The position numbers and the translations under genes were made by a program. The notes under the pieces were generated by a model. It did no database searches, was not told where the DNA came from, and was given only the letters and a program-made list of their open reading frames with translations. From positions 62,001 through 126,000 of the forward strand of contig NW_021833473.1 of NCBI RefSeq assembly GCF_006345805.1: a stretch of DNA of 64,000 nt, written 5' to 3'. Below, piece after piece: positions 4,133-59,995 of the stretch (position 1 is the first letter of the stretch; each line of letters begins with the position of its first letter). Origin of the DNA: Octopus sinensis. Lineage: Eukaryota.

Positions 4133-4592
4133 TATGGTAAGACGATTCCTTCCCAACCATATGATTACGGGTTCAGTCTATCAGTCCAACTGCGTGGCAC
4201 CTTGGGCAAGTGTCTACGACTACAGTCACAGCCTGACGAAAACCCTGTAAGTGGATTTGGTAAGCGGAAACTGAAAGAAACTAGTCGTATATATATGTGT
4301 GTGTGTTTGTCACCCACCACTGCTTGACAGCCGGTGTTGGTGTATTTATATGTCCGTAACATAGCTGTTCGGCAAAAGATATCGATAGAATAAGTATCAG
4401 GCTCTAAAATGTACTGGTGTCGATATATTCGTTTAAAAACTATTAAAGACAGTGCCTGAAACAAGTAAAAGAAAAAGGATGTATGTATTTATGTATGTGT
4501 ATAAATGTATGTATATATACATATATCTAAGTTTATAAATATATCTGTTTATACACTCACACACATTTATATGTATATCTGTATATATATAT

Positions 4593-5382: not shown

Positions 5383-6124
5383 GGCGGCGAGCTGGCAGAA
5401 ACGTTAGCACGCCGGGCGAAATGCGCAGCCGTATTTCGTCCGCCGCTACGTTCTGAGTTCAAATTCCGCCGAGGTCGACTTTGCCTTTCATCCTTTCGGG
5501 GTCGATAAATTAAGTCCCAGTTACGCACTGGGGTCGATGTAATCGACTTAATCCGTTTGTCTGTCCTCTCTGTGTTTAGCCCCTTGTGGGTAGTAAAGAA
5601 ATAGGTATTTCGTCTGCAGTTACGTTCTGAGTTCAAATTCCGCCGAGGTCGACTTTGCCTTTCATCCTTTCAGGGTTGATAAATTAACTACCAGTTACGC
5701 ACTGGGGTCGATGTAATCGACTTAATTCGTCTGTCTGTCCTTGTTTGTCCCCTGTGTTTAGCCCCTTGTGGGTAGTAAAGAAATAGGTATTCGTCTGCAG
5801 TTACGTTCTGAGTTCAAATTCCGCCGAGGTCGACTTTGCCTTTCATCCTTTCAGGGTTGATAAATTAACTACCAGTTACGCACTGGGGTCGATGTAATCG
5901 ACTTAATTCGTCTGTCTGTCCTTGTTTGTCCCCTGTGTTTAGCCCCTTGTGGGTAGTAAAGAAATAGGTATTTCGTCTGCCGTCACGTTCTGAGTTCAAA
6001 TTCCGCCGAGGTCGACTTTGCCTTTCACCCTTTAGGAGTCGATAAATTAAATACCAGTTACGCACTGGGGTCGATGAAATCAACTTAATCCATTTGTTTG
6101 TCCCCTTGTGGGTTATAAAGAAAC
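5383..6124 (+). mobile_element. Same SINE, one head plus 4 tandem bodies
   Basis: About 180-bp unit repeated head to tail. Confidence 0.85.
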
Positions 6125-16980: not shown

Positions 16981-17132
16981 CAGCGACAACAGCATCATTT
17001 TTCAAAGCCCTTCGCACAATCATAATGGCATCATGGAGAGATCTTTCGGTCTCTTCAATAAATTGTTCGGCACCACCTCTCAGAATCATTGTGCAGGTTT
17101 TCGCTTGGGGACATCCAGTGAAAATGTTATAC
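16981..17132 (-). CDS. CCT7: CCT7 exon 10: [50 protein letters not shown]
   Basis: LRGG and ERSLHDA chaperonin motifs; |gtgaga donor; 152 nt. Confidence 0.97.
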
Positions 17133-17781
17133 CTAACATCAAGTACAGCAATAAGAAAACATTAGTATCACTAACCTTAATAGTCAATTCTCAAAATTAT
17201 CAGTGTGACCACTTCACTGAGGATACAACCTGCTTTTGAACTAACAAAATTTATTACTAAACAGAGTCATCATCATCATCCTCATCGTCGTTTAACGTCC
17301 ATTCTCCATGCTAGCATGGGTTGGACGGTTCGACCGGGGATCTGGGAAGCCAGAAGGCTGCACCAGGCTCCAGTCTAATCTGGCAATGTTTCTACAGCTG
17401 GATGCCCTTCCTAACACCAACCACTCCGTGAGTGTAGTGGGTGCTTTTTACGTGCCACCTGCACTGGTGCCAGGCGAGGCTGGCATCGGCCACGGTCGGA
17501 TTGGTGCATTTTACGTGCCACCTGCACGGAACCCAGTTGAGAAGAAAAGTGAGAAATTTACATTTATTTTACTTTAATATTTTAAGTCTTGCAATGCAGT
17601 AATATATCTGGATATATTGTGAAGTAAATAACACAATAAAAAGACCATTTTTTATTAACTTTCATTGCGAATGAAAGCTGTAGTTTATATGTTCTTTATG
17701 TTGTAGCATAGTATACACGTAATTACAAGTCGAAAGAATCAACCAACAAACAGTATGTTGTCAAAGAATCGATATATTGAG

Positions 17782-17962
17782 ATATGTTGGTTTCAAAGAC
17801 TAAGTTCTACCAGATGGATTTGACAGAACAACTCTCATGAAACCAAAATAGTATCAAAATAAAACCAGAACAGTTCGACTTGTTGATACAACAGTTTTAG
17901 TATTCCACAAATGTAACACTGTATGACAATAGCAGACATCCAGTTGACTTGTATGTGGTATT
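17782..17962 (-). ncRNA. SNORA74: U19/SNORA74-like H/ACA snoRNA, copy a
   Basis: 5' hairpin has pocket AGTCA/GTTAC and H box ATACTA 14 nt downstream. A middle domain follows, then a 3' hairpin TGGTTTCA/TGAAACCA with pocket GAGAGT/TAGT and ACA+3. The pockets pair with LSU helix 69 GUAACUAUGACUCUC. Confidence 0.85.
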
Positions 17963-18360
17963 TCAGAAAAATGAGTTTTGGAAATTGTCAGTCATAAACC
18001 AATTCTGATGTCTAACATATTTGAGATAATAGTGGAGCTAACAACGACAATTCATGTACCAGTATTACTATATTATTATGAGATTCAATGTATTCAAAAA
18101 TCTTTAGTGAAACCCAGTATTTTGTGATTCATGGACTGTAAAAGAAAGCTGGTAATCAAGGTGTATGTTTGATAAGCTGCAACTAAACGAGAATGATTAG
18201 AGCAAAGCATTCAGATGAAAACCATGCCAAATCAGACTGGAGTCTGAGGTAGCCTTCCCCTGTGCCAGCCCAGTCAATCCGTTCAAATGGACATTAAATG
18301 ATGACGATGATGATGATAAGAATTATACCAATACAGTGGGGTAAGAATATTAATAGAATG

Positions 18361-18499
18361 TTATGTAGGTTTCATTTATCAAGTTCTACCATATTATGTT
18401 TGATAGAACAGCTCTCGTGTAACCAGATTAGTTTTAATATTCCACAAACGCAATACTGTATGACAATATTAGGCATCCAGTTGTCTTAAACTGTGGTAC
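18361..18499 (-). ncRNA. U19-related two-hairpin H/ACA candidate, copy 1
   Basis: Alignable to both U19 guide hairpins but lacks the middle domain; H box ATATTA, ACA+3, 139 nt; pockets altered. Confidence 0.55.
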
Positions 18500-19295
18500 A
18501 CTTTATATATGAAAAATAAATCATGTTATTAATGAACATTGTTAGTCATAATGATGTATATACAAAATTATTAGTTAGTAACACTGTGTTAAGGTACAAG
18601 GTTTATTAAATACAGTTAGATAAGACTTTAATTAGCTCAAAGCATTCAATCAACATTTTCAAAAACAAATTTGGTAATTATGAATAAATAATTCTAAAGC
18701 CTGAGAAAGGAAACACCATCCATAGTGTTACATGTAATACAGAACAAGATAATATTTAATAAATTAACCTATTTCATATCAATTAATACAAAGGCTACTA
18801 AAAATTATGTTTTGGCTTAACATTTTAGCATTCAACCTGGCCATATCCAGCCCAAATATTCCACCTGTTTTGTGTTCAAATCAGCCAGAACTGGCCTCTC
18901 ATACCTATCCTACTATGTCATTCTAAAAATAAACAATGTGAATAAGCATTACACTTGATAGAGTAATGTGAATGCTAAAGGTTTAAGGAAGATATTGACT
19001 AAATCCCTAAAAATTCTTTACTGATTCTCAAATTAACTGGAACAGATGTATTTTAATAGAAGTAATTTTATCACCCTGCATTGTTTAATAATTAGACTAT
19101 TTAATAAAGTAGATAAGTCAATGCACACAGGGCACTAAGTTTTCTGATGATAAGGTATCACCCATAAATTCAGATTCCTAATAAGATCTAAGCACAAAAT
19201 ACCAACTCAGTCATAAAGAATCAGATAAATTTATTAGTTTTATGAACGAATCAAAAAATTCTACAAATGTAGAGGAGTAAACCGTAGCACAGAGA

Positions 19296-19476
19296 CAATG
19301 TTGGTTTCAAAGACTAAGTTCTACCAGATGAATTTGACAGAACAACTCTCATGAAACCAAAATAGCATCAAAGTAAAACAAGAACAGTTCAACTTGTTGA
19401 TACAATAGTTTTAGTATCCCACAAATGTAACACTGTATGACAATAGCAGACATCCAGTTGACTTGTATGTGGTATT
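19296..19476 (-). ncRNA. SNORA74: U19/SNORA74-like H/ACA snoRNA, copy b
   Basis: Same 181-nt structure; boxes and guide strands intact. Confidence 0.85.
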
Positions 19477-20323
19477 TCAGATAAATAAGCCCTTTGGAAA
19501 TTGTCAGTAATATCCAGCCGTAGAAACACTGCCAGATCAGACTGGGAAATTGTCAGTAATATCCAGCTGTAGAAACACTGCCAGATCAGACTGGGCCTGA
19601 TGCAGCCTTCTGGCTTCACAGACCCCAGTTGAACTGTCCAACCCATGCTAGCATGGAAAGCGGACGCTAAATGATGATGAAACCAATTCTGATGTCTAAT
19701 ACATTTGAGATAATAGTGACGCTAACAACGACAATTCATGTATCAGTATTACTATATTACTTATGAAATTCAATGTATTCAAAAATCTTTAGTGAAACCC
19801 AGTATTTTGTGATTCATGGACTGTAAAAGAAAACTGGTAATCAAGGTGTATGTTTGATAAACTGCAACTAAACGAGAATGATTAGATCAAAGCATTCAGG
19901 TTTTAAAAAAATAAAAACAGACAATCAACTTAATATGCAATGAATTAGAAAGGTTAAAATAATTGACCACAATATCATCATCATAATCATTTTAAAAACA
20001 CAAGATATAAATTAGTGAGGTGAACAGGAAATGAAATATTAGATACAGCAAATATATTCATCCCATCACACACACATTCAGCTGCCTTACAAGATCAAAG
20101 CAATGAAGCACCAATTCGTGCTGGTGGCATGTAAATGCACCCATTACACTCTTGGAGTAGTTGGCATTAGGAAGGGCATCCAACCGCAGAAAACCATGCC
20201 AAATCAGACTGGAGTCTGAGGTAGCCTTCCCCTGTGCCAGCCCAGTCAATCTGTTCAAACGGACATATGATGATGATGATAAGAATTATACCAATACAGA
20301 GGGGTAAGAATATTAATAGAATG

Positions 20324-20462
20324 TTATGTAGGTTTCATTTATCAAGTTCTACCATATTATGTTTGATAGAACAACTCTCGTGTAACCAGATTAGTTTTAA
20401 TATTCCACAAACGCAATACTGTATGACAATATTAGGCATCCAGTTGTCTTAAACTGTGGTAC
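20324..20462 (-). ncRNA. U19-related two-hairpin H/ACA candidate, copy 2
   Basis: Near-identical to 18361-18499. Confidence 0.55.
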
Positions 20463-21346
20463 ACTTTATATATAAAAAACAAATCATGTTATTAATGAAC
20501 ATTGTTAGTCATAATGATGTATATACAAAATTATTAGTTAATCAATAACACTGTGTTAAAGGTACAAGGTTTATTAAATACAGTTAGATAAGACTTTAAT
20601 TAGCTCAAAGCATTCATTCAACATTTTCAAAAACAAATTTGATAATTATGAATAAATAATTCTAAAGCCTGAGAAAGGAAACCCCACCCAGTGTTACATT
20701 TAATACGGAACAAGATATTATTTAATAAATTCATATCAATTAATACAAAGTCTACTAAAAATTATATTTTGTGTAAAAATTTTTGGCTTAACATTTTAGC
20801 ATTCAACCTGGCCGTATCCAGCCCAAATATTCCACCTGTTTTACGTTCAAATCAGCCAGATCTGGACTCTCCTACCTATCCTACTATGTCATTCTAAAAT
20901 AAACAATCACATCATTGAAATATTGAATACATAAGTAATTTAAACCAATGTGAATAAGCATTACATTTGACAGAGTAATGTGGATGCTAAAGGCTCAAGG
21001 AAGATATCAACTAAATCCCTAAAAATTCTTTACTGATTCTCAAATTAACTGGAACAGATGTATTTTAATAGAAGTATGAGAAATGAAAGGTAACAATGAC
21101 CTTTTGATATAATTTTATCACCCAGCATTGTTTAATAATTAGACTATTTAATAAAGTAGATAAGTGAATGCACACGGGGCACTAAGTTTTCTGATGGTAA
21201 GGTATTACCCATAAATTCAGATTCCTTGTAAGATCTAAGCACAAAATACCAACTCAGTCATAAAGAATCAGATAAATATTTTTATTAGTTTTATGGACGA
21301 ATCTAAAAATTCTACAAATGTAGAGGAGTAAACCTTAGCACAGAGA

Positions 21347-21527
21347 CAATGTTGGTTTCAAAGACTAAGTTCTACCAGATGAATTTGACAGAACAACTCT
21401 CATGAAACCAAAATAGCATCAAAGTAAAACAAGAACAGTTCGACTTGTTGATACAATAGTTTTAGTATCCCACAAATGTAACACTGTATGACAATAGCAG
21501 ACATCCAGTTGACTTGTATGTGGTATT
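21347..21527 (-). ncRNA. SNORA74: U19/SNORA74-like H/ACA snoRNA, copy c
   Basis: Same 181-nt structure; boxes and guide strands intact. Confidence 0.85.
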
Positions 21528-22118
21528 TCAGATAAATAAGCCCTTTGGAAATTGTCAGTCATAAACCAATTCTGATGACTAATATATTTGAGATAATAGT
21601 GACGCTAACAACGACTAGTGAAACCAAGTATTTTGTGATTCATGGACTGTAAAAGAAAACTGGTAATCAAGGTGTATGTTTGATAAGCTACAAGTAAACG
21701 AGACAGACAATCAACTTAATATGTAATGAATTAGAAAGGTTAAAATAATTGACCACAATATCATCATCATAATCATTTTAAAAACACAAGATATAAATTA
21801 GTGAGGTGAACAGGAAATGAAATATTAGATACAGCAAATATATTCATCCCATCACACACACATTCAGCTGCCTTACAAGATCAAAGCAATGAAGCACCAA
21901 TTCGTGCTGGTGGCATGTAAATGCACCCATTACACTCTTTGAGTAGTTGGCATTAGGAAGGGCATCCAACCGCAGAAAACCATGCCAAATCAGACTGGAG
22001 TCTGAGGTAGCCTTCCTGTGTGCCAGCCCAGTCAATCTGTTCAAACAGACATTAAATGATGACGATGATGATGATAAGAATTATACCAATACAGTGGGGT
22101 AAGAATATTAATAGAATG

Positions 22119-22257
22119 TTATGTAGGTTTCATTTATCAAGTTCTACCATATTATGTTTGATAGAACAACTCTCGTGTAACCAGATTAGTTTTAATATTC
22201 CACAAACGCAATACTGTATGACAATATTAGGCATCCAGTTGTCTTAAACTGTGGTAC
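22119..22257 (-). ncRNA. U19-related two-hairpin H/ACA candidate, copy 3
   Basis: Near-identical to 18361-18499. Confidence 0.55.
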
Positions 22258-23032
22258 ACTGTATATATAAAAAACAAATCATGTTATTAATGAACATTGT
22301 TAATCATAATGATGTATATACAAAATTATTAGTTAATCAATAACACTGTGTTAAAGGTACTAGGTTTATTAAATACAGTTAGAAGATAAGACTTTAATTA
22401 GCTCAAAGCATTCATTCAATATTTTCAAAAACAAATAATTCTAAAGACTAAGAAAGGAAACACCACCCATAGTGTTACATTTAATACTGAACAAGATATT
22501 ATTTAATAAATTCATATCAATTAATACAAAGTCTACTAAAAATTATATTTTGTGTAAAAATTTTTGGCTTAACATTTTAGCATTCAACCTGGCCATATCC
22601 AGCCCAAATATTCCACCTGTTTTATGTTCAAATCAGCCAGAACTGGCCTCTCATACCTATCCTACTATGTCATTCTAAAAATAAACAATGTAAATAAGCA
22701 TTACATTTGACAGAGTAATGTGGATGCTAAAGGCTTAAGGAAGATATTGACTAAATCCCTAAAAATTCTTTACTGATTTTCAAATTAACCGGAACAGATG
22801 TATTTTAATAGAAGTAGGAGAAACGAAAGGTAAAAATGACCTTTTGATATAATTTTATCACCCAGCACTAAGTTTTCTGATGATAAGGTATCACCCATAA
22901 ATTCAGATTCCTTGTAAGATCTAAGCACAAAATACCAACTCAGTCATAAAGAATCAGATAAATATTTTTATTAGTTTTATGGACAAATCAAAAATTTCTA
23001 CAAATGTAGAGGAGTAACGCTTAGCACAGAGA

Positions 23033-23213
23033 CAATGTTGGTTTCAAAGACTAAGTTCTACCAAATAAATTTGACGGAACAACTCTCATGAAACCAAAAT
23101 AGCATCAAAGTAAAACAAGAACAGTTCAACTTGTTGATACAACAGTTTTAGTATTCCACAAATGTAACACTGTATGACAATAGCAGACATCCAGTTGACT
23201 TGTATGTGGTATT
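23033..23213 (-). ncRNA. SNORA74: U19/SNORA74-like H/ACA snoRNA, copy d
   Basis: Same 181-nt structure; guides intact, with a few loop and upper-stem changes. Confidence 0.82.
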
Positions 23214-23710
23214 CCAGATAAATAAGCCTTTTGGAAATGATATCGAACCAAGTAAGAGACATTACCAACAATTCAGTTACTAGTACTATAATAGAGCTTA
23301 CTAAACAACACTGCAATCAAAACAAATTACAGTTGAACAACAATATTTCAAGTACTTTTAAAGTAAAATCACCAGGAAACACTTTCATGCAATATCTAAT
23401 AACCAGTAATAGAATATGAAGAATGTCGAAAACTTTGCTGAGTGTATATATTATATATTTGATTATTGTGATGCAGATGATTTATTTACTCAAAACATCT
23501 GTTCAATATAACCTTTATCCATTTGTAAACATTAGATAAGCTTCAGATTAGTAATAACTATGAATATGAATGATTATCATACGCAGCAAAATGTAAAGAT
23601 TTTCAGAGGATTAAAAAGAAAGAATAATAATAATAATAATAATAAAAGGGATGGTCTGTCATTCATATGACTCAAAAAATCATCTATTTTCACTTCAAGT
23701 ATATCATATA

Positions 23711-24074
23711 CTAGCACTATGACCTGGCGTTGCCGGGTCATAGTGCTAGTGCATGCATATACAGCCGCGTGCGTGTGCACATACACGCAAGTACTGTCCA
23801 AATCTCCGACCAATCACATACAGCTAGCTGGCATTCAATTGGCGTATCAAGTTTCGGGCATTTTGATTGGGTTTTGGATAGAAAATTCACAAAAAAGTCA
23901 CTTCTATTGATTTCTTAATGGCTTTGCGGGGTGACTGGGGAAATGTAAAGATGTGCACGACCACCCTTGGACGGTTTTGAACGACTGTAGAAAGTACGAG
24001 CCCTCTAACTGAAAAATTGTGGATTTGTATAAAGGGCACACATGCAGACATCTTGCCGTTTATATATATAGAGA
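23711..24074 (-). mobile_element. Different Helitron-like non-autonomous element
   Basis: 5' TCTCTATATATA; 3' long hairpin ending CTAG|T. Confidence 0.7.
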
Positions 24075-24621
24075 TCATATAATAATGGAGTCTATTCGCT
24101 ATGTAAAATGTAAATAGAAAGAAAACGAAGACAAATCGGTTGAATAGAACTATATTTAAGGAGCCATCTAATAAACAAAACTATGGTTTTCGAGTTGGTT
24201 TATGTATTCAAACAACCATAACAAAAATTGCGAAATTTATGCAAGAACTTTTGGCTAAGTTGTGACTGAAACATCAGCTTAATAAACAAGCTTTATGAAA
24301 TCAGTCTAAATTCACAAGTATTTTGGAATTTAAATTAAAACGCAGAAGGGTGAGATAAATTAGAAACATAATAGTAAACGGGTTAATTCATATCGGACTC
24401 AACCAATCAAGTTTATAGATTTCCAATGCCAAGCATATTTTTTTTGTGGGAGGTGTTGTGTCTTCAGGTAAAGATGTTTAAGATAGTTTTATTGTTAACA
24501 AACCCATTTGGTAGCAATATTAAAGGAAAAGAAAACATATTCCTGTTATATACATAAACACAAGAATTTCTTTAGAGGATAGAGTTAAGGCTGCATAAAA
24601 CACAATAAGTTAATCAGTTAC

Positions 24622-24774
24622 CTGTCGCCTCCAATTTGCTGTTCTTCAAAATGTTCACATTTTCCAAGATTTTTCTCAGTCATCTTTTGAACTGATGTTA
24701 AGATGGCACCACCACAAGCTTTCATGGTTCGATGAAGATCATCATCAACTACACGGCCAGCACAAAACATGTCT
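24622..24774 (-). CDS. CCT7: CCT7 exon 9: [51 protein letters not shown]
   Basis: tag| and |gtaact; 153 nt. Confidence 0.97.
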
Positions 24775-29127: not shown

Positions 29128-30951
29128 CACTTGCATTTTATCAACAGTGCAAAAGTGAGCAGCTGGATTTAGGAGGCAATGGAAGAGTCCTGAAGATGAC
29201 CCAAGGTCTTGACATCCTGCAACTGCCAGCACTGAAGAAAACATTGATCATGTTCACTACATGGAGACGGAAGAAAGGCAATTGACTTTAAATCAAAAAT
29301 CCAGTGCTATTAGTTTATCTTTTGAAGAGAGCTGATAATATTCTGCTTGGTGGGTGCTACACCTGACATCTGATCAAAAGTGCACCAGGCTGACCAGAGC
29401 AAATATTCTGCTTGGTGGGTGCTACACCTGACATCTGATCAAAAGTGCACCAGGCTGACTAGAGCAAATATTCTGCTCGGTGGGTGCTACACCTGACATT
29501 TGATCTAAAGTGCACCAGGCTGACCAGAGCAAATATTCTGCTTGGTGGGTGCTATACCTGACATCTGATCTAAAGTGCACCAGGCTGACCAGAGCAAATA
29601 TTCTTCTTGGTGGGTGCTACACCTGACATCTGATCAAAAGTGCACCAGGCTGACCAGAGCAAATATTCTGCTTGGTGGGTGCTACACCTGACATCTGATC
29701 AAAAGTGCACCAGGCTGACCAGAGCAAATATTCTGCTTGGTGGGTGCTACACCTGACATCTGATCAAAAGTGCACCAGGCTGACCAGAGCAAATATTCTG
29801 CTCGGTGGGTGCTACACCTGACATCTGATCTAAAGTGCACCAGGCTGACCAGAGCAAATATTCTGCTTGATGGGTGCTACACCTGACATCTGATCAAAAG
29901 TGCACCAGGCTGACCAGAGCAAATATTCTGCTTGGTGGGTGCTACACCTGACATCTGATCTAAAGTGCACCGGGCTGACCAGAGCAAATATTCTGCTCGG
30001 TGGGTGCTACACCTGACATCTGATCTAAAGTGCACCAGGCTGACCAGAGCAAATATTCTGCTTGGTGGGTGCTACACCTGACATCTGATCAAAAGTGCAC
30101 CAGGCTGACCAGAGCAAATATTCTGTTTGGTGGGTGCTACACCTGACATCTGATCAAAAGTGCACCAGGTTGACCACAGCAAATATTCTGTTTGGTGGGT
30201 GCTACACCTGACATCTGATCAAAAGTGCACCAGGCTGACCACAGCACAGGAAAACCTGACATTGTCTATGGCACATCCAGTTGGCTTCTTTGAAAGTTTC
30301 CTAGGTCAGGATGAGTGTTAGGTTCATCACTTTGAGCCAGGGACAAAGATACATTCCATCCAGTGGAAACACCTCTCCTCACTTGCTCCAAATAAGGTCA
30401 TGCTTGTTTCATCAGCAGGGAAGGTGATGGCCTGTTCCTTGGGATACAAAAGGCATTGTGTTTATTGATGTCTTCAAAAGAGTCATACATCAAAGGAAAG
30501 TACGATGCCAACATGTTGAGGCAGTTAAGAAAGGCTATCAAGACCAAAAAAAAACCAAACAAATGGGATTTTGTTTCATCAGGACAATGTTCCAGCACAA
30601 AAAAAACCTTGCTTTCAAGGGCTGGTGTGCATGACTGTGACTTTGAACCAGTAGATCCCTGCCCCAGCTATTCTCTTGATTTGACTCCTTCTGATTATCA
30701 TGTACCCCAGCATGAAAAAAACACTTGGCTGGGAACTAATATCGCAGATGATGTCATATCTGCTGTTGTTGGCCCTTTATTTTTGACTAACAGGATGAAA
30801 GCTTCTTCACCAATGTGATCCAAGCACTGCAACACCAATGGAAAAATAGTTCTTGTAAGTAGGAACTATTTTGAAAAATAAAAAAAACCTCATCTGGTCA
30901 CATTCCATAAGAATATTTTGAACAGCCTATGAACTTTTCGGCTGACCGTCA
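29128..30951 (+). mobile_element. Degenerate mariner transposon, 5'-truncated, in CCT7 intron 5
   Basis: Broken reading frames resemble mariner transposase (STVQKWAAEFRR, EDDPRSGRP, DE..HHFEP, LRQLRKAIK, QDN, YSLDLTPSDY); 3' TIR-like cctatgaacttttcggctgacc at about 30926-30948. Confidence 0.85.
29341..30245 (+). repeat. 65-bp minisatellite, 14 copies
   Basis: Unit TTCTGCTTGGTGGGTGCTACACCTGACATCTGATCAAAAGTGCACCAGGCTGACCAGAGCAAATA starts at 29341, 29406 ... 30186. Confidence 0.97.
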
Positions 30952-42412: not shown

Positions 42413-43187
42413 GGCGGCGAGCTGGCAGAAACGTTAGCACGCCGGGCGAAATGCTTTGTGGTATTTCGTCTGCCGCTACGTCCCGAGTTCAAATTCTGCC
42501 GAGGTCGACTTTGCCTTTCATCCTTTCGGGATCGATTATATAAGTACCAGTTACGCACTGAAGTCGATATAATCGACTTAATCCCTTTGTCTGTCCTTGT
42601 TTGTCCCCTCTGTGTTTAGTCCCTTGTGGGTAGTAAAGAAACAGGTATTTCGTCTGCCGTTACGTTCTGAGTTCAAATTCCGCCGAGGTCGCCTTTGCCT
42701 TTCATCCTTTCGGGGTCGATAAATTAAGTACCAGTTACGCACTGGGGTCGATGTAAACGACTTAATCCCGTTGTCTGTCCTTGTTTGTCCTCTCTGTGTT
42801 TAGCCCCTTGTGGGTAGTAAAGAAATAGGTATTTCGTCTGTCGTTACGTCCTGAGTTCAAATTCCGCCGAGGTCGACTTTACCTTTCATCCTTTCGGGGT
42901 CGATAAATTAAGTACCAGTTACGCACTGGGGTCGATGTAAACGACTTAATCCCGTTGTCTGTCCTTGTTTGTCCTCTCTGTGTTTAGCCCCTTGTGGGTA
43001 GTAAAGAAATAGGTATTTCGTCTGTCGTTACGTCCTGAGTTCAAATTCCGCCGAGGTCGACTTTACCTTTCATCCTTTCGGGGTCGATAAATTAAGTACC
43101 AGTTACGCACTGGGATCGATGTAATCGACTTTGTCTGTCCTTGTTTGTCCTCTCTGTGTTTGGTCCCTTGTGGGTAGTAAAGAAATA
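42413..43187 (+). mobile_element. Same SINE, one head plus 4 tandem bodies
   Basis: As above. Confidence 0.85.
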
Positions 43188-43438
43188 GATACCTGGGTTT
43201 GCGGCCCATGCCGCAAGGTTGGAGCTGCAGAATATATCGCGCCCCAGTTTAGGGATCTGTCTCCCTTGTAGCAGAAGAGGGTTATTCTCATTGGGCACTT
43301 AATTAAATTAAAGGGAAACAATTCACTTTCCTCAAACTAGGACTCTGATGTGATATAGGTCGCTTCACCTACAAGAAATAGCAGCCAACATTTCTCAGAT
43401 TTCACATTGGCATCTTAAAAATGATGGGTGCTCTTTAA

Positions 43439-52736: not shown

Positions 52737-53976
52737 CAGACATAACCGAAGTAAATAGACACCACATAAAACATCGTTTTGTATTTATTCTAACTTGTAA
52801 AGGTTTATATTTTTTATTGATTGGCATTTTTATGTTTCAGGTTCTATATGTGACTGTTTAATCATGCCATATACAAAAGAAGCCTTGGAACTGTCTGAAT
52901 TTCAAAGAGGCCGTATTGTGGGTCATTCTGAAGGTGGATGTAGTGTAACATCGTAGAAAACCTTGGGATCCTACTTTCTACAGTTAATAGAGGGACTGTG
53001 CAATTGACCAGATAGATGAAAGAGTCCACATCACCTTGTCCAGATCAACCAGGGACCTCTGACAGGACCCTTCACTTTGCTAAGAGAACTGTGGAGGACA
53101 GTCCTCGTTGTAAGACCTTTGACATAGCAGAACAAGTGGGTATCAGTCCCAGAACAGCTGTCAGGTATCTCCACAAACTTGGTTACTATGGTAGAGCAGG
53201 AAGAAGGAAACCACATCTTTGATCAGCTAATATGAAGCAGAGAAAAGATTGGGCCAGTGAGATGGTGGAGAGGCCTTTTGGGACATTATCATATTCTCCA
53301 ATGATTCCAGATTTGCTGTATTTTCTGACAGTGGTCAAGTGTTGGTCTGGAGATTCTGTGATCAAGAATTTGGTGTGGAAAGATTGCAGCCAACAATGAA
53401 ACATGGCAGCTATACTGTGGTTGTCTGGGGAGCAATTTTGAGCAATGGTTGGTTGATCAGAGCTGGTGGAAGTAAGAAAAACATAAACTCCGATAAATAT
53501 ATGTCCATATTGCAGAAAGGACACTTTCCAATCTTCTCAAATGGTGAAATGATTAAAGAAGACTCTTTATTTATGGAAGATGGGGCTCTTTGTCACACGC
53601 CTAAAATGACCCAAGATTTGTTGGATGAAAAAGGTATTAAAAGGCTTCCACGGCCAAGCCAGTTACCAGATATGAACCCTATTGAACAGCACTGGAGAAT
53701 AATGGACAGGACACTTCATAAAAGGAACAAGAAAGCATCTTCAAAGCCAGATCTTTTGAGATTACTGCATCAAAATTGGCAAGAAATTCTTCAAGAGAAT
53801 ATTCATCATCTGATCATTAATATGCCTAATAGAGTCTTTGCATTGAAAAATGCAAAGGGCACGTCTATTAAATATTTAATATTCACATTATAACAATTAA
53901 TAATTTGAATGTATAATTTCAGATTTATATAAATTTTAATGATTATAAGGGTGTCCATTTACTTCTGTTATGCCTG
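52737..53976 (+). mobile_element. Near full-length degenerate Tc1-family transposon (DD34E)
   Basis: About 27-bp imperfect TIRs (CAGACATAACCGAAGTAAATAGACACC / GGTGTCCATTTACTTCTGTTATGCCTG); ATG at 52864 (MPYTKEALELSEFQRGRIVG); ORF 53339..53893 has EDGA..34 aa..NPIE; frameshifted. Confidence 0.92.
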
Positions 53977-56506: not shown

Positions 56507-56694
56507 ACACAGACACACACACACACACACATACGCACACATACACATATACATACAGGCATATATACAGTCGTCCCATATTAGATATCTGTACATCGGT
56601 GGCTTATAGTTACATACATTTGACGACTAGTTTTTCAAGTTTCTTAGTGTTCATTGTTAAATATCCAGTGACACGTAAGTACAAAGTGATTATG

Positions 56695-57354
56695 TTGTTT
56701 GTCCGTCGATGCAACGAACACCATCTGGTCATCCCGAGGTGGGGTGGGCTTGTTTTGTAAGTCTGCAGATGGCAAGTGAAGCCAATCTGCGCCTGAAAGA
56801 GTTTTTGACAGCGTGGACAGGGAATGGTAACGCCTGCTACAGTGTTGTTAGCTCTGTTCTTCCTGGCTTGTCTGCGGTTTTCTGCAGCAGCGATCCTATT
56901 GGTCTCGCATGTGTTGGCACCCTTGTGGACAGCTGATCGCCACCCTTCTCTGTCTGGAGCAGACTGCTCCCAAGTGTCATGGTCGATGTTGAAGGCTTTC
57001 AGTGAGGCTTTCAGTGTGTCCTTAAAGCACTTCTTCTGGCCGCCTTGTGAGCGCTTTCCCTTTTGCAGCTCGCCAAAGAGCAACCTTTTTGGTAATCGAT
57101 CGTCTGCCCAGCGAAGCTAAGACTGCATCAAAATGGTATGGATGCTGGGCAGGTTAGCACGTAATAGTACCTCGGTGTCCGGGATCCTGCCCTGCCACTT
57201 TATGCCGATAAGTTTTCTGAGGCGTATTGTATGAAAGTGGTTCAGCTTCCTGGCATGACGCTGGTAGACCGTCCAGGACTCGCAGCCGTAAAGCAGCGTT
57301 GTGAGAACAACAGCCCTGTACACCGTGATCTTTGTCATGATAGTGATCCCCATC
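56695..57354 (-). mobile_element. 3' end of an RTE-clade non-LTR retrotransposon
   Basis: TKITVYRAVVLTTLLYGCESW, LFGELQKGKRSQGGQKK and a terminal CPRC..H zinc-finger-like motif; one in-frame stop. Confidence 0.9.
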
Positions 57355-57541
57355 TTGTCACAGACAGTGATTATACTGTTTCGTAGACTATGATCTTGCC
57401 AAAGTATTAGAATGTCTGTTAGAGGGTACATTTGAGCAAAAAAGTTAATGCTCTTGTAAGTAAGGCATTCAGTTTGGAGAAAGATCCTTTCAGAACAGAA
57501 GACAGACCGGTTATCACGACAATCAAAAAGCAGCACAGCAG

Positions 57542-57581
<40 letters not shown>

Positions 57582-57622
57582 GAGAGAGAAAGAGAGAGAA
57601 AGAAAGAGAGAGAGAGAGAGAG

Positions 57623-57653
<31 letters not shown>

Positions 57654-57689
57654 TGCATTACCTGAAAGAAAAAAATCAAGTCCCCCAAT

Positions 57690-59200
57690 GTGCAGTAAAA
57701 GAAAGCTCCTGCCGAAAAAAAGTAAGGCAGACATCAGGGACTGGACATGTCAGGTCCAAGAACATATGAGCAGGCTTAGAAGGGCAGAAAGCAGCCGGAA
57801 GCAGAGGAAAGTGAGGGGGATTAAACGGGTGCAACTTATCAAAACTAGTTTAGGCTCACTCGAATACTGTTGGGTTAAACAAAATCAAGGAAACTGATCA
57901 GCCCCTAAGAAGATATAGAAACGTTTCTGAGGGAGATCCCAAATATCGGTAGAGCTGAATTAGCAGAAAACAAGCTTATCATCCTGGAAAACTTCCCACC
58001 CTGGAAAAAAGTGAAAGAGGTAGTGAACAAGGCCAGATCAGGATCAACCTCTGGCCCAAATGGTATAACTTATAAAGTATACAAGAAATGTCCACGGCAT
58101 CTTTGGCGGCTGCGGAGGCTGTTCCGAAAGATCTAGACAAAGAGGATCATTCCACCATGATGGATGAAAGCAGAAGGATGTTTCATGCTGGATAGTGGGA
58201 ATGGGGGACTCCTCAGCCATCACTCAATTCAAGACTATATCACTCCTGAGTGTTTAGGAGAAAATCTTTTTTTTTTCAGTATTAGCCAAAAGAATGACTT
58301 CCCACATGACAATGGATTCATAAAGACATCTCTCCAGAAAGGTGGATTTCTCAGGATGCCAGGAACACACCGGAGTTTTCAATCAGTTGATCTATGGGGC
58401 CAAGAGAAGCAAAAGCGACTTGATAGTGGTCTGGCTCAATCTGGCAAAAGCGTATGGATCAATTCCTCATGCCCACATAGTTGCAGCCCTTGACTATTAT
58501 CATAACCTTCCGCACATCGAGGGAATAATCACCGGCTACTTTGGAGGCATCCAGTTACGTTTTAAAACAACCCGCTTTACACCTTGATGGCAGGACCTGG
58601 AGAAAGCAATCATAACTGGTTGCACAATTTCCCTTATCTCTTTCACCATGGGAATGAATCTCCTCATATCAGCTGCTGATAAAGAAGGCCAAGAGCCAAC
58701 AATAGAGACAGGCATTCAATAAGGGTTTTCATGGATGATCTTACAGCAACAACCACAACCCATGTGGAGGCGGAAAGGGTGCTGACTTCACTTGAAAATG
58801 TAGCAACATGGTCTGGAATGAAGTTTAAGCTCAAGAAATCAAAGAGTAAGGTGATCAGGAGAGGCAAATTAAGAAACAAAATCAGACCTACTAATTGAAA
58901 CGCGCCAAGTATGAGGGCTTTCTGCAGGATTGCAAGGACAACAGTTATGGCTTTTACCAGTCGATATTGGCTGTAGGGGGTTCTCTGCCCAGTCGGTATG
59001 GAGGAAGCTTACAGCCATTGGCATGAGAGGAAAGAACGAAGGGTGGCTGTGTGTAGGACGGGAGAGACAGCAGAAGGCACCTATTGGTGGTTATAGAGCA
59101 AGACAGAGGAGTTAAACTGGAAGCCAAGAGGAGATGAAGAGCAGTGGTTGGCAACCTCTGCTGATGGGTGGCTGTTATCGTTGAGGGTTGAAACACTAAG
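57690..59200 (+). mobile_element. Degenerate RLE-type (R2 superfamily, HERO-like) non-LTR retrotransposon, internally deleted
   Basis: Broken frames give GPNGITYKVYKKCP, KAEGCF, EHTGV, VWLNLAKAYGSIPH, GFMDDL and the RLE-end motif PVDIGCRGF. The HERO assignment is from recalled motifs. Confidence 0.75.
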
Positions 59201-59377: not shown

Positions 59378-59995
59378 TATTCTTTTCTACTCTAGGCACA
59401 AGGCTCGAAAGTTTTGGGGAGGGGGGCCAGTCGATTATATCGACCCCAGTACGCAACTGGTACTTAAGTTATCGACTCCGAAAGGATGAAAGGTAAAGTC
59501 GAACTCGGCGGAAATTGAATTCAGAACGTAGCGGCAGACGAAATACCTATTTCTTTACTACCCACAAGGGGCTAAACACAGAGGGGACAAACAAGGACAG
59601 ACAAACGGGTTAGGTCGATTTCATCGTCTCCAGTGCGTAACTGGTACTTATTTAATCGATCCCGAAAGGATGAAAGGCAAACTCGACCTTGGTGGAATTT
59701 GAACTCAGAACGTAACGGCAGACGAAATACCGCTCAGCATTTCGCTAGGCGTACTAACGTTTCTTATTTCTTTACTACCCACAAGGGGCTAAACATAGAG
59801 AGGACAAAGAAGGACAGACATAGGTATTAAGTCGATTACATCGACCCCAGTGCGTAACTGGTACTTAATTTATCGACCCCGAAAGGATGAAAGGCATAGT
59901 CGACCTCAGCGGAATTAGAACTCTGAACGTAGAGACAGACGAAATACAGCAAAGCATTTCGCCTTGCATGCTAACGTTTCTGCCAGCTCACTGCC
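59378..59995 (-). mobile_element. Same SINE family, about 3 bodies
   Basis: As above, reverse orientation. Confidence 0.8.

What the first reader, a model, noticed from the sequence alone, without database searches (positions are those of the whole stretch)
18361..22257. U19-derived two-hairpin H/ACA paralogue with rewired guide pockets (3 copies)
Seen: 139-nt elements at 18361, 20324 and 22119 align to both U19 guide hairpins but lack the ~42-nt middle domain, giving canonical H/ACA size. The stem ACTGGATG/CATACAGT is identical, one G-U pair becomes A-U (GTTCTA/TAGAAC), and H box (ATATTA, 14 nt spacing) and ACA+3 are kept. Both pockets have changed (TAAGACA/ATTGCG and GAGAGC/TTGATAA) and no longer fit helix 69. 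Inference: either a new guide RNA for an unknown target, born by duplication, or a pseudogene. I could not assign a target by eye.
Basis: partly seen in the sequence, partly recalled or inferred. Interest (0 to 1): 0.8.

Follow-up and report, generated by a model that had tools for sequence, protein, structure and literature searches.

The report
Shortened U19 snoRNA paralogue, intronic array
One intron of a chaperonin (CCT7) gene carries a tandem array of four U19 pseudouridylation-guide RNAs alternating with three copies of a shorter RNA derived from U19; the shorter RNA looks selectively maintained, but its target is not established, so it is a modestly interesting new member of an ordinary RNA class.

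Summary
The three 139-nt elements are real. They lie on the minus strand and alternate with four U19/SNORA74 copies (Rfam E about 1e-8, below the gathering score, H69 guide bases intact). All seven sit in one 7.5-kb intron of a CCT7 (TCP-1 eta) gene, in the sense orientation.

The paralogue aligns to both U19 hairpins and lacks the 43-nt middle domain. Two results point to selection rather than decay. Compared with U19, 2 of 56 stem positions changed against 23 of 75 non-stem positions (p=7e-5). Among the tandem units, the paralogue is the least variable 139-nt window (1 variable column against 6.9% in flanks, p=0.002).

"Both pockets rewired" is only partly right. The GAGAGC strand occurs in copy 1 only; copies 2 and 3 keep U19's GAGAGT. 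The 5' hairpin changes favour a fold without a pocket, and no conserved rRNA site fits that pocket.

The 3' pocket has one decent conserved candidate: 28S CUAUCGA-U-C-CUUUUG, equivalent to human Psi4263. It is as good as U19's own cognate sites, but 9% of shuffled pockets do as well.

I found no related genome, so conservation between species and expression remain untested. Verdict: probably a functional new H/ACA snoRNA with a single guide pocket. Interest is moderate.

The parts
22119..22257 (-). Paralogue copy 3 (139 nt, two-hairpin H/ACA architecture), identical to copy 2
20324..20462 (-). Paralogue copy 2. 5' hairpin 20459-20405; H box AUAUUA 20403-20398; 3' hairpin 20387-20331; ACA 20329-20327; the position that varies between copies (U here, C in copy 1) is 20374
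18361..18499 (-). Paralogue copy 1; its single difference from copies 2 and 3 is C at 18411 (GAGAGC instead of GAGAGU)
23034..23210 (-). U19/SNORA74 copy 4 (first in the direction of transcription); carries a U-to-C change at 23076 that breaks an upper-stem pair of the 3' hairpin
21348..21524 (-). U19/SNORA74 copy 3
19297..19473 (-). U19/SNORA74 copy 2
17783..17959 (-). U19/SNORA74 copy 1 (last in the direction of transcription; about 650 nt upstream of the intron's 3' splice site)
17133..24621 (-). Host intron (about 7.49 kb, GT at 24621-24620, AG at 17134-17133) of a CCT7 / TCP-1 eta gene; holds all seven snoRNA copies in the sense orientation
24622..24774 (-). CCT7 exon upstream of the host intron ([52 protein letters not shown])
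16981..17132 (-). CCT7 exon downstream of the host intron ([50 protein letters not shown])
20501..20514 (-). Motif TTATGACTRACAAT, found 40-55 nt upstream of both U19 and paralogue copies (also at 17984-17997, 18538-18551, 21551-21564, 22296-22309). It is the only recognisable similarity between the flanks of U19 and the paralogue; its function is unknown (it resembles a branch point, CURAC)

Best explanation
The 139-nt element is a selectively maintained box H/ACA snoRNA gene. It arose from U19/SNORA74 by duplication and loss of the middle domain. Later it was co-amplified with U19 as a tandem unit of about 1.5-2 kb inside one intron of the CCT7 gene. Like U19, it would be released from the spliced host intron (inferred).

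Its 3' hairpin keeps a canonical pseudouridylation pocket: 8+8 nt, with the top of the pocket 15-16 nt from ACA. This is probably the only working guide. The best candidate substrate is the 28S rRNA site CUAUCGA-U-C-CUUUUG, equivalent to human Psi4263 and about 520 nt 3' of helix 69 (inferred, weakly supported).

The 5' hairpin has probably stopped being a guide. Its substitutions convert loop and pocket bases into an extended helix, so it would serve only as the structural 5' half of the H/ACA RNP (inferred from folding and one covarying pair).
For: Derivation from U19:
- A1 alignment and blastn.
- The U19 copies are genuine helix 69 guides. Rfam SNORA74 matches at E 8e-9 with the guide bases GUCA/GUUAC/UGAGAGU/UAGUCU conserved.
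- My own target scan returns the helix 69 sites in 119-120 of 120 eukaryotic rDNA loci.

Selection on the paralogue:
- U19 against paralogue: 2/56 stem positions differ against 23/75 non-stem positions, Fisher p=7e-5.
- The H-box A residues and ACA are intact.
- Among the three tandem units, 1/139 paralogue columns vary against 73/1056 flank columns, p=0.002. All 27 windows of 139 nt with at most one variable column lie over the paralogue.
- The flanks of U19 and the paralogue are otherwise not alignable.

Host intron: CCT7 exons mapped by tblastn, with GT..AG splice sites.

3' pocket:
- The minimum-free-energy fold gives the canonical pocket.
- Among 883 conserved U contexts there is one good hit, 6+6 bp at -5.0 kcal/mol. 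U19's cognate sites score -6.2 and -7.1.
- The site core is conserved in all 5 metazoan-like loci that reach it, at offsets of 516-528 nt from the helix 69 Psi against 522 in human.
- Human Psi4263 is 98% modified (PMC6182160) and is guided by SNORA2 (PMC6466398).
- The U/C difference between copies falls on a guide base left unpaired in this model.
- The U-to-C change next to GAGAG adds a C-G pair to this target.

5' hairpin:
- The canonical fold is predicted in U19 (P=0.995). In the paralogue the pocket-less fold wins: -10.2/-11.7 against -6.3 kcal/mol, with P(canonical)=0.05.
- Only 5.5% of random mutants with the same numbers of changes do this.
- All six changes fit the alternative helix, including one U-A to C-G double change.
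- The best conserved rRNA site for this pocket (-2.3 kcal/mol) is matched or beaten by 63% of shuffled pockets.
Against: - There are no expression data, and no orthologue from any related genome could be obtained.
- The conservation evidence therefore rests on paralogous copies in one genome. Localised gene conversion could mimic part of it.
- The 3' basal stem has an uncompensated A.A mismatch, which could reduce RNP assembly.
- The whole-molecule fold is no more stable than shuffled sequence (z=-0.8).
- The target call is weak: 8.7% of shuffled pockets reach -5.0 kcal/mol. It has 3 G-U pairs and two unpaired guide U's at the top of the pocket.
- The species' own rRNA was not available.
- The alternative fold of the 5' hairpin rests on one lineage, that is, on single evolutionary events.
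- Mapping the candidate site to human position 4263 uses my recollection of the human sequence together with offsets.
- Seven H/ACA units in one intron is unusual for animals, and their processing is unproven.
Confidence: 0.5

Rival explanations
1. It is a non-functional U19 pseudogene with an internal deletion, carried along passively when the U19-containing unit was tandemly amplified. Its apparent conservation reflects the youth of the units or local gene conversion.
For: There is no Rfam family hit, only generic SNORA41 similarity at E=0.73. The 3' basal stem has an uncompensated A.A mismatch. The 5' hairpin is predicted to misfold. No significant target was found. The overall fold has z=-0.8.
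Against: Substitutions since the split from U19 avoid stems and boxes about ten-fold (p=7e-5), which neutral decay would not do. The element is the single least variable window of the unit, with 1 variable column against about 9.6 expected (p=0.002). It is even less variable than the real U19 copies (14/354). Flanks adjacent to it do vary, which argues against conversion of the whole unit.
Confidence: 0.2
2. One reading: a canonical double guide in which both pockets were rewired to new, still unknown targets. Possible targets are lineage-specific rRNA expansion segments, snRNA, mRNA, or the neighbouring helix 69 uridine equivalent to human Psi3747.
For: Both canonical stems and both boxes are intact, and the pocket-to-box spacing is 14-16 nt. 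By eye, the 5' pocket strand UUUAAGA can pair with UCUUAAG just 3' of a known human Psi (3747, listed), with a weak 3-bp second arm. The 3' strand AUUGCGUU is a perfect 8-nt complement of 28S GACGCAAU, 74 nt upstream of helix 69.
Against: In conserved rRNA the 5' pocket has no site with two stable arms: the best is -2.3 kcal/mol, and 63% of shuffled pockets do as well. The thermodynamic ensemble puts the canonical 5' upper stem at P=0.05. In 2 of 3 copies one strand of the 3' pocket is not rewired at all. There is no CAB box (UGAG) in either terminal loop, by reading of the sequence, so an snRNA target in Cajal bodies is unlikely.
Confidence: 0.15
3. It is an H/ACA-class RNA with a role other than guiding modification. 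Examples are capping the ends of intron-derived sno-lncRNAs (as in SLERT), acting in cis on CCT7 splicing or expression, or pairing with two separate rRNA segments as an snR30/U17-type chaperone.
For: Seven H/ACA units in one intron is the arrangement that yields snoRNA-ended lncRNAs in mammals (own knowledge; background in PMC4234469, seen). The two 5' pocket strands complement two separate 28S segments on either side of helix 68-69: GACGCAAU and UCUCUUAAG (and reading of the sequence).
Against: This is entirely circumstantial. Complementarities of this length are at chance level. No feature specific to these roles was tested.
Confidence: 0.1

Closest known systems
SNORA74 / U19 (Rfam RF00090), guide for 28S helix 69 Psi3741 and Psi3743 (human numbering)
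   Same: It is clearly the parent. Both guide hairpins align: 85-87% identity in the 5' hairpin, identical upper stems, the same 5' basal stem, and the same box spacing. The GAGAGU strand of the 3' pocket is retained in 2 of 3 copies. It is located next to genuine U19 copies.
   Different: It lacks the 43-nt middle domain. Six of 15 bases in the 5' pocket and 5 of 8 bases in the 3' strand of the 3' pocket have changed, so neither helix 69 site is recognised with two arms. There is no match to the RF00090 model even at E<=10 in a 191-nt search.
Two-hairpin helix 69 guides of other lineages (C. elegans ceN81, RF01658; yeast snR191)
   Same: Canonical size of about 126-140 nt without a middle domain. 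ceN81 gives weak hits to the 5' hairpins of U19 (E 0.26) and of the paralogue (E 0.57).
   Different: Those RNAs keep the helix 69 guide bases (GUCA...GUUAC); the paralogue does not.
SNORA2 (ACA2), the human guide for 28S Psi4263 and Psi4282
   Same: It would share a substrate with the paralogue's 3' pocket if the candidate target is right.
   Different: No sequence or model similarity was detected: there was no SNORA2 hit. If the target is shared, that is convergence, not homology.
Intronic snoRNA clusters and snoRNA-ended lncRNAs (Drosophila multi-snoRNA introns; mammalian sno-lncRNAs and SLERT)
   Same: Several snoRNAs lie in a single intron of a protein-coding host, in the sense orientation.
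   Different: Here the cluster is a recent tandem amplification of a two-gene unit (U19 plus its own derivative). No transcript evidence is available. The comparison rests on my own knowledge.

Membership tests
Box H/ACA snoRNA (class) | Hairpin - H box (ANANNA) - hairpin - ACA, with ACA 3 nt from the mature 3' end | tested here: met
   CCACA..UGUGG hairpin, AUAUUA, GGUUACA..UGAAACC hairpin, then 1 nt and ACA. Full-length but weak alignment to a generic H/ACA model (SNORA41 positions 1-133/133, 18 bits, E=0.73). The mature 3' end itself cannot be read from DNA.
Box H/ACA snoRNA (class) | Pseudouridylation pocket whose top lies 14-16 nt upstream of the H or ACA box | tested here: met
   14 nt (5' hairpin, canonical fold) and 15-16 nt (3' hairpin), counted on the sequence. 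However, the 5' pocket is predicted to be closed by an alternative helix.
Box H/ACA snoRNA (class) | Stable accumulation as a dyskerin/NHP2/NOP10/GAR1 RNP | not testable with these tools
   No expression or RIP data were accessible.
Box H/ACA snoRNA (class) | Bipartite complementarity to a uridine-containing substrate | tested here: inconclusive
   3' pocket: 28S CUAUCGA-U-C-CUUUUG, 6+6 bp, -5.0 kcal/mol, matched by 8.7% of shuffles. 5' pocket: none. The search used 120 foreign eukaryotic rDNA loci, not the species' own rRNA.
SNORA74 / U19 (RF00090) | Score against the Rfam covariance model | tested here: not met
   Paralogue: no hit at E<=10. For comparison, the four neighbouring U19 copies score 40-45 bits (E 8e-9 to 2e-7), also below the gathering score of 71.
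SNORA74 / U19 (RF00090) | Guide complementarity to 28S helix 69 (GUAAC-UA-UGACU and AACUA-UG-ACUCUC) | tested here: not met
   Paralogue: neither helix 69 site appears in the scans. Only the GAGAGU strand still matches. U19 copies: both sites found in 119-120 of 120 loci.
SNORA74 / U19 (RF00090) | Extra middle domain between the two guide hairpins (RNA of about 200 nt) | tested here: not met
   43 alignment columns are absent in all three paralogue copies.
scaRNA (Cajal-body H/ACA) | CAB box (UGAG) in the terminal loops | tested here: not met
   The terminal loops CCUAAUAUUGU and AACAUAAUA contain no UGAG (read).

The most novel reading that the evidence does not exclude
This would be a lineage-specific case of snoRNA neofunctionalisation seen part-way. 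A U19 duplicate lost its middle domain and converted its 5' guide hairpin into a structural clamp without a pocket. It re-aimed only the 3' strand of its 3' pocket, so that the retained GAGAG strand now pairs through G-U wobbles with CUUUUG. That would take over, or add, pseudouridylation of the 28S site equivalent to human Psi4263, convergently with SNORA2. The U19-paralogue pair was then amplified about 3.5-fold inside a single CCT7 intron, which implies polycistronic processing of seven H/ACA RNAs from one animal intron.
Probability: 0.2. Interest if true: 0.5.

Novelty: new member of a known kind. Interest (0 to 1): 0.35.

Why it matters
If the RNA is expressed, it is a clean example of how new H/ACA guides arise. 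The parent and its derivative lie side by side. The substitutions can be sorted into constrained stems and boxes, one retained guide strand, one replaced guide strand, and a hairpin that seems to have given up guiding. It would also add an unannotated snoRNA family to a poorly studied animal lineage, and a case of many snoRNAs processed from one intron of a housekeeping gene. It does not open a new mechanism, because orphan and paralogous H/ACA snoRNAs are common.

Tried and rejected
(1) Rfam at gathering thresholds over the whole window gave nothing. The E-value scan of the whole window gave only the four SNORA74 hits plus simple-repeat 'miRNA' artefacts. There are no tRNAs.

(2) Cross-species test through spurious ORFs overlapping the paralogue or U19: the ORFs are not on record and have no homologues. 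A transposase ORF used to identify the genome is not on record either.

(3) Cross-species test through the host gene. The best CCT7 exon matches in the protein collection are only 75-79% identical, so no close relative is available. I fetched three of these loci (L121-L123). The orthologous intron there is about 0.4 kb and has no SNORA74. This says nothing about the paralogue's age.

(4) My first target scan, which counted base pairs, was too noisy. Singleton hits in variable spacers outranked true sites, and 10-30% of shuffled pockets matched the observed scores. I replaced it with a two-arm energy score restricted to U contexts conserved in at least 8 of 120 rDNA loci.

(5) A metazoan-only scan was too sparse to add anything.

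(6) I considered by eye, and rejected, U2 snRNA around U53/U54 as a 3'-pocket target. The 7-bp 3' arm is good but there is no 5' arm. This rests on my memory of the U2 sequence only.

(7) Alignment of the flanks of U19 against those of the paralogue gave no significant homology beyond an 18-nt motif.

(8) Literature searches for cephalopod or mollusc snoRNAs and for U19 paralogues found nothing relevant.

(9) My impression that the genome is from an octopus, based on SINE-like repeats ending in (GAT)n, is from memory and was not tested.
Full report
OBSERVATION

The region holds a tandem array read on the minus strand. An exact-stem pattern search finds seven hairpins of the type ACTGGATG-N11-CATACAGT, where 0.01 are expected by chance. 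An E-value Rfam scan assigns four of them to SNORA74/U19 at 17783-17959, 19297-19473, 21348-21524 and 23034-23210. These are full-length alignments at 40-45 bits, E 8e-9 to 2e-7. That is below the family's gathering score of 71, which is why the default scan was empty.

The U19 guide bases that vertebrates use for helix 69 are conserved: GUCA, GUUAC, UGAGAGU and UAGUCU. A low-stringency blastn finds no further copy of either type in the 64 kb.

U19 and paralogue copies alternate. The units are 1.5-2.05 kb long and differ by several insertions and deletions of SINE-like sequence, so this is a real array and not an assembly duplicate.

MAFFT alignment A1 confirms several points:
- The paralogue matches both guide hairpins of U19 and lacks 43 columns of middle domain.
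- Both upper stems and the 5' basal stem are unchanged.
- One G-U pair became A-U.
- The H box is AUAUUA (U19: AUACUA, a change at an N position).
- ACA is kept.

Two corrections are needed. GAGAGC exists only in copy 1 (C at 18411). Copies 2 and 3 have GAGAGU, exactly as in U19, so in most copies only the 3' strand of the 3' pocket changed (UUAGUCUU to UUGAUAAA). Also, the 3' basal stem acquired an uncompensated A.A mismatch in all copies.

GENOMIC CONTEXT

While reading the minus strand upstream of the array I noticed a coding exon. Its translation hits Cpn60/TCP-1 fragments, one of them named T-complex protein 1 subunit eta. I ran tblastn with the neighbouring exon-ORFs of three fetched loci. 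This maps eight CCT7 exons on the minus strand between 34085 and 13680.

The array lies entirely inside one intron, 24621-17133, with GT and AG splice sites read. It is in the sense orientation. The first U19 starts 1.4 kb after the 5' splice site, and the last ends 0.65 kb before the 3' splice site. So this is a protein-coding host with seven H/ACA units in a single intron. That is unusual for animals, where one snoRNA per intron is the norm (own knowledge).

IS THE PARALOGUE MAINTAINED OR DECAYING?

Two independent comparisons within this genome argue for maintenance.

(a) Since the split from U19. Between the basal CCACA and the ACA box, 2 of 56 positions in the four canonical stems differ, against 23 of 75 elsewhere (Fisher p=7e-5). 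The constrained A residues of the H box and the ACA are intact. U19's own pockets equal the vertebrate consensus, so the pocket changes happened on the paralogue's lineage. On that lineage the stems were spared about ten-fold. The flanks of U19 and the paralogue are no longer alignable, apart from an 18-nt motif.

(b) Since the tandem amplification. In the three-unit alignment, 73 of 1056 ungapped flank columns vary (6.9%), 14 of 354 U19 columns (4.0%), and 1 of 139 paralogue columns (p=0.002 against flanks). All 27 sliding windows of 139 nt with at most one variable column lie over the paralogue.

Caveats: the copies are paralogous and from one genome, and local gene conversion cannot be excluded. 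The decisive test is orthologues in related species, and I could not run it. ORFs overlapping the elements are not indexed. The nearest CCT7 exon matches available are only 75-79% identical, and they have a 0.4-kb intron without SNORA74.

STRUCTURE

The 3' hairpin folds canonically in the unconstrained minimum-free-energy prediction. It has a basal stem of 4+2 bp around the A.A mismatch, an 8+8 nt pocket, a 9-bp upper stem and a 9-nt loop.

The 5' hairpin does not fold canonically. For U19, the canonical H/ACA fold is the predicted one, with P of a canonical upper-stem pair at 0.995. For the paralogue, a helix without a pocket is favoured: GGAUGC/GCGUUU stacked on AAUAUUGU/ACAGUAUU. Its energy is -10.2 kcal/mol (the overall minimum is -11.7), against -6.3 for the canonical fold, and P(canonical)=0.05.

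All six U19-to-paralogue substitutions in the terminal loop and the 3' pocket strand are compatible with this helix. There is one double change (U-A to C-G), three one-sided changes that keep or improve a pair, and one new pair. Only 5.5% of random mutants of U19 with the same number of changes in the same regions lose the canonical fold to this degree.

This is suggestive rather than proven, because it rests on one lineage and on a nearest-neighbour energy model for an AU-rich RNA.

TARGETS

The species' rRNA is not in the window. I used the single metagenome scan to collect 120 eukaryotic rDNA loci through the universal helix 69 motif. I then wrote an H/ACA target scan. A pair-counting version was too noisy.

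The final version requires two arms, each with negative duplex energy, anchored within 2 nt of the top of the pocket. It is restricted to 883 U contexts conserved in at least 8 loci. It behaves well on the positive control:
- The U19 5' pocket returns only GGGAGUAAC-UA-UGACUCUCU (-6.2 kcal/mol).
- The U19 3' pocket returns GAGUAACUA-UG-ACUCUCUUA (-7.1), plus one 18S off-target (-9.0).

For the paralogue's 5' pocket there is nothing: the best hit is -2.3, and 63% of shuffled pockets do as well.

For the 3' pocket there is one good hit, 28S GCCUAUCGA-U-C-CUUUUGACU. Its arms are 6+6 bp (three G-U pairs) at -5.0 kcal/mol. The two guide U's next to the upper stem are left unpaired, and 8.7% of shuffled pockets do as well. 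For comparison, 5.8% of shuffles match the genuine U19 5' pocket.

The core CCUAUCGAUCCUUUUG is present in all five metazoan-like loci that extend that far, 516-528 nt after the helix 69 Psi. In human the distance from Psi3741 to Psi4263 is 522 nt. Taoka et al. list Psi4263 (98%), Psi4266, Psi4269, Um4276 and Psi4282 (PMC6182160). This spacing fits the U's of CGAUCCUUUUGACUUUUAAGAGU only if 4263 is the U of CGAUCC; the human sequence here is from my memory. SNORA2 is the human guide for 4263 (PMC6466398).

Two small details fit this model. The only difference between copies (U or C at 20374/18411) is one of the unpaired guide bases. The U-to-C change just 5' of GAGAG adds a C-G pair to this substrate.

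I rate the assignment at roughly one in four. The score alone is not significant, but the single best hit landing on a known conserved Psi site is unlikely by chance. I estimate that about 7-10% of rRNA uridines are such sites.

COMPARISON WITH KNOWN FAMILIES

The element works like, and by architecture is, a box H/ACA snoRNA. It is not a member of SNORA74: it has no model hit, no middle domain and no helix 69 complementarity. It is also not a scaRNA, because it has no CAB box. It matches no Rfam family beyond generic H/ACA shape (SNORA41, E=0.73). It is best described as a new H/ACA family derived from U19.

VERDICT

The finding is real. 'Functional' is favoured over 'pseudogene', at about 0.75 against 0.2 for being a maintained RNA. 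'Both pockets rewired' should be replaced by 'one pocket half-rewired, the other probably closed'.

Novelty: a new member of a known kind. Interest is moderate (0.35). It would rise if orthologues, expression and a Psi at the candidate site are shown.

Noticed in passing
window 13680-34085, minus strand: A CCT7 (T-complex protein 1 subunit eta, Cpn60_TCP1) gene with long introns. Exons were mapped at 34085-33957, 28991-28824, 27822-27649, 26144-25998, 24774-24622, 17132-16981, 15721-15521 and 13844-13680. The 5' exons probably lie further upstream and were not mapped.
   Followed up: partly
window 17133-24621, minus strand: Seven H/ACA snoRNA units lie in a single intron of a protein-coding gene. 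This departs from the usual animal rule of one snoRNA per intron and could yield snoRNA-ended lncRNAs. No transcript data were available.
   Followed up: no
window 17984-17997, 18538-18551, 20501-20514, 21551-21564, 22296-22309 (minus strand): A 14-nt motif, TTATGACTRACAAT, lies 40-55 nt upstream of both U19 and paralogue copies (5 matches against 0.23 expected). It is an island of similarity in otherwise unalignable flanks. It contains a branch-point-like CURAC and is followed by an AAAG. Its function is unknown.
   Followed up: partly
window 23076 (U19 copy 4) and other U19 variable sites: The U19 copies vary more than the paralogue (14 of 354 variable columns). Copy 4 has a U-to-C change that breaks an upper-stem pair of its 3' hairpin. 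This may reflect relaxed constraint from four-fold redundancy.
   Followed up: partly
rDNA loci L001-L120 (18S, about 3.4 kb upstream of helix 69): The U19 3' pocket has a stronger predicted duplex (-9.0 kcal/mol, 7+6 bp) with 18S ACAGAUUGA-UA-GCUCUUUCU, in 18 of 120 loci, than with its cognate helix 69 site. This could be a secondary target or just a false positive of the method.
   Followed up: no
window 29337-30246: A tandem array of 14 copies of a 65-nt unit (96% matches) inside another CCT7 intron.
   Followed up: no
window 5431-6103, 42460-43188, 59548-59981: Tandem arrays of a SINE-like unit of 181-217 nt (…GAGTTCAAATTCCGCCGAGGTCGAC…). Dispersed SINE-like elements ending in (GAT)n also occur, including insertions that differ between the snoRNA units (for example 19490-19680 and 20118-20260). 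From memory they resemble octopus repeats; I did not test this.
   Followed up: no
window 53339-53893 (+), 30456-30818 (+), 56610-57734 (-): Fragments of Tc1/mariner-type transposase and of a reverse transcriptase, that is, transposon remnants. I judged this from the ORF translations only.
   Followed up: no
window 23699-23762: An inverted repeat of about 64 nt (83% self-complementary) between the host exon and the first U19. It gave a weak SNORA81-like hit (E=5.9), probably spurious.
   Followed up: no
L121-L123 (ENA contigs ERZ25067868 and ERZ25073751): CCT7 genes of unidentified eukaryotes with compact introns, next to a G-alpha gene. The intron orthologous to the host intron is about 0.4 kb and has no SNORA74.
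   Followed up: partly
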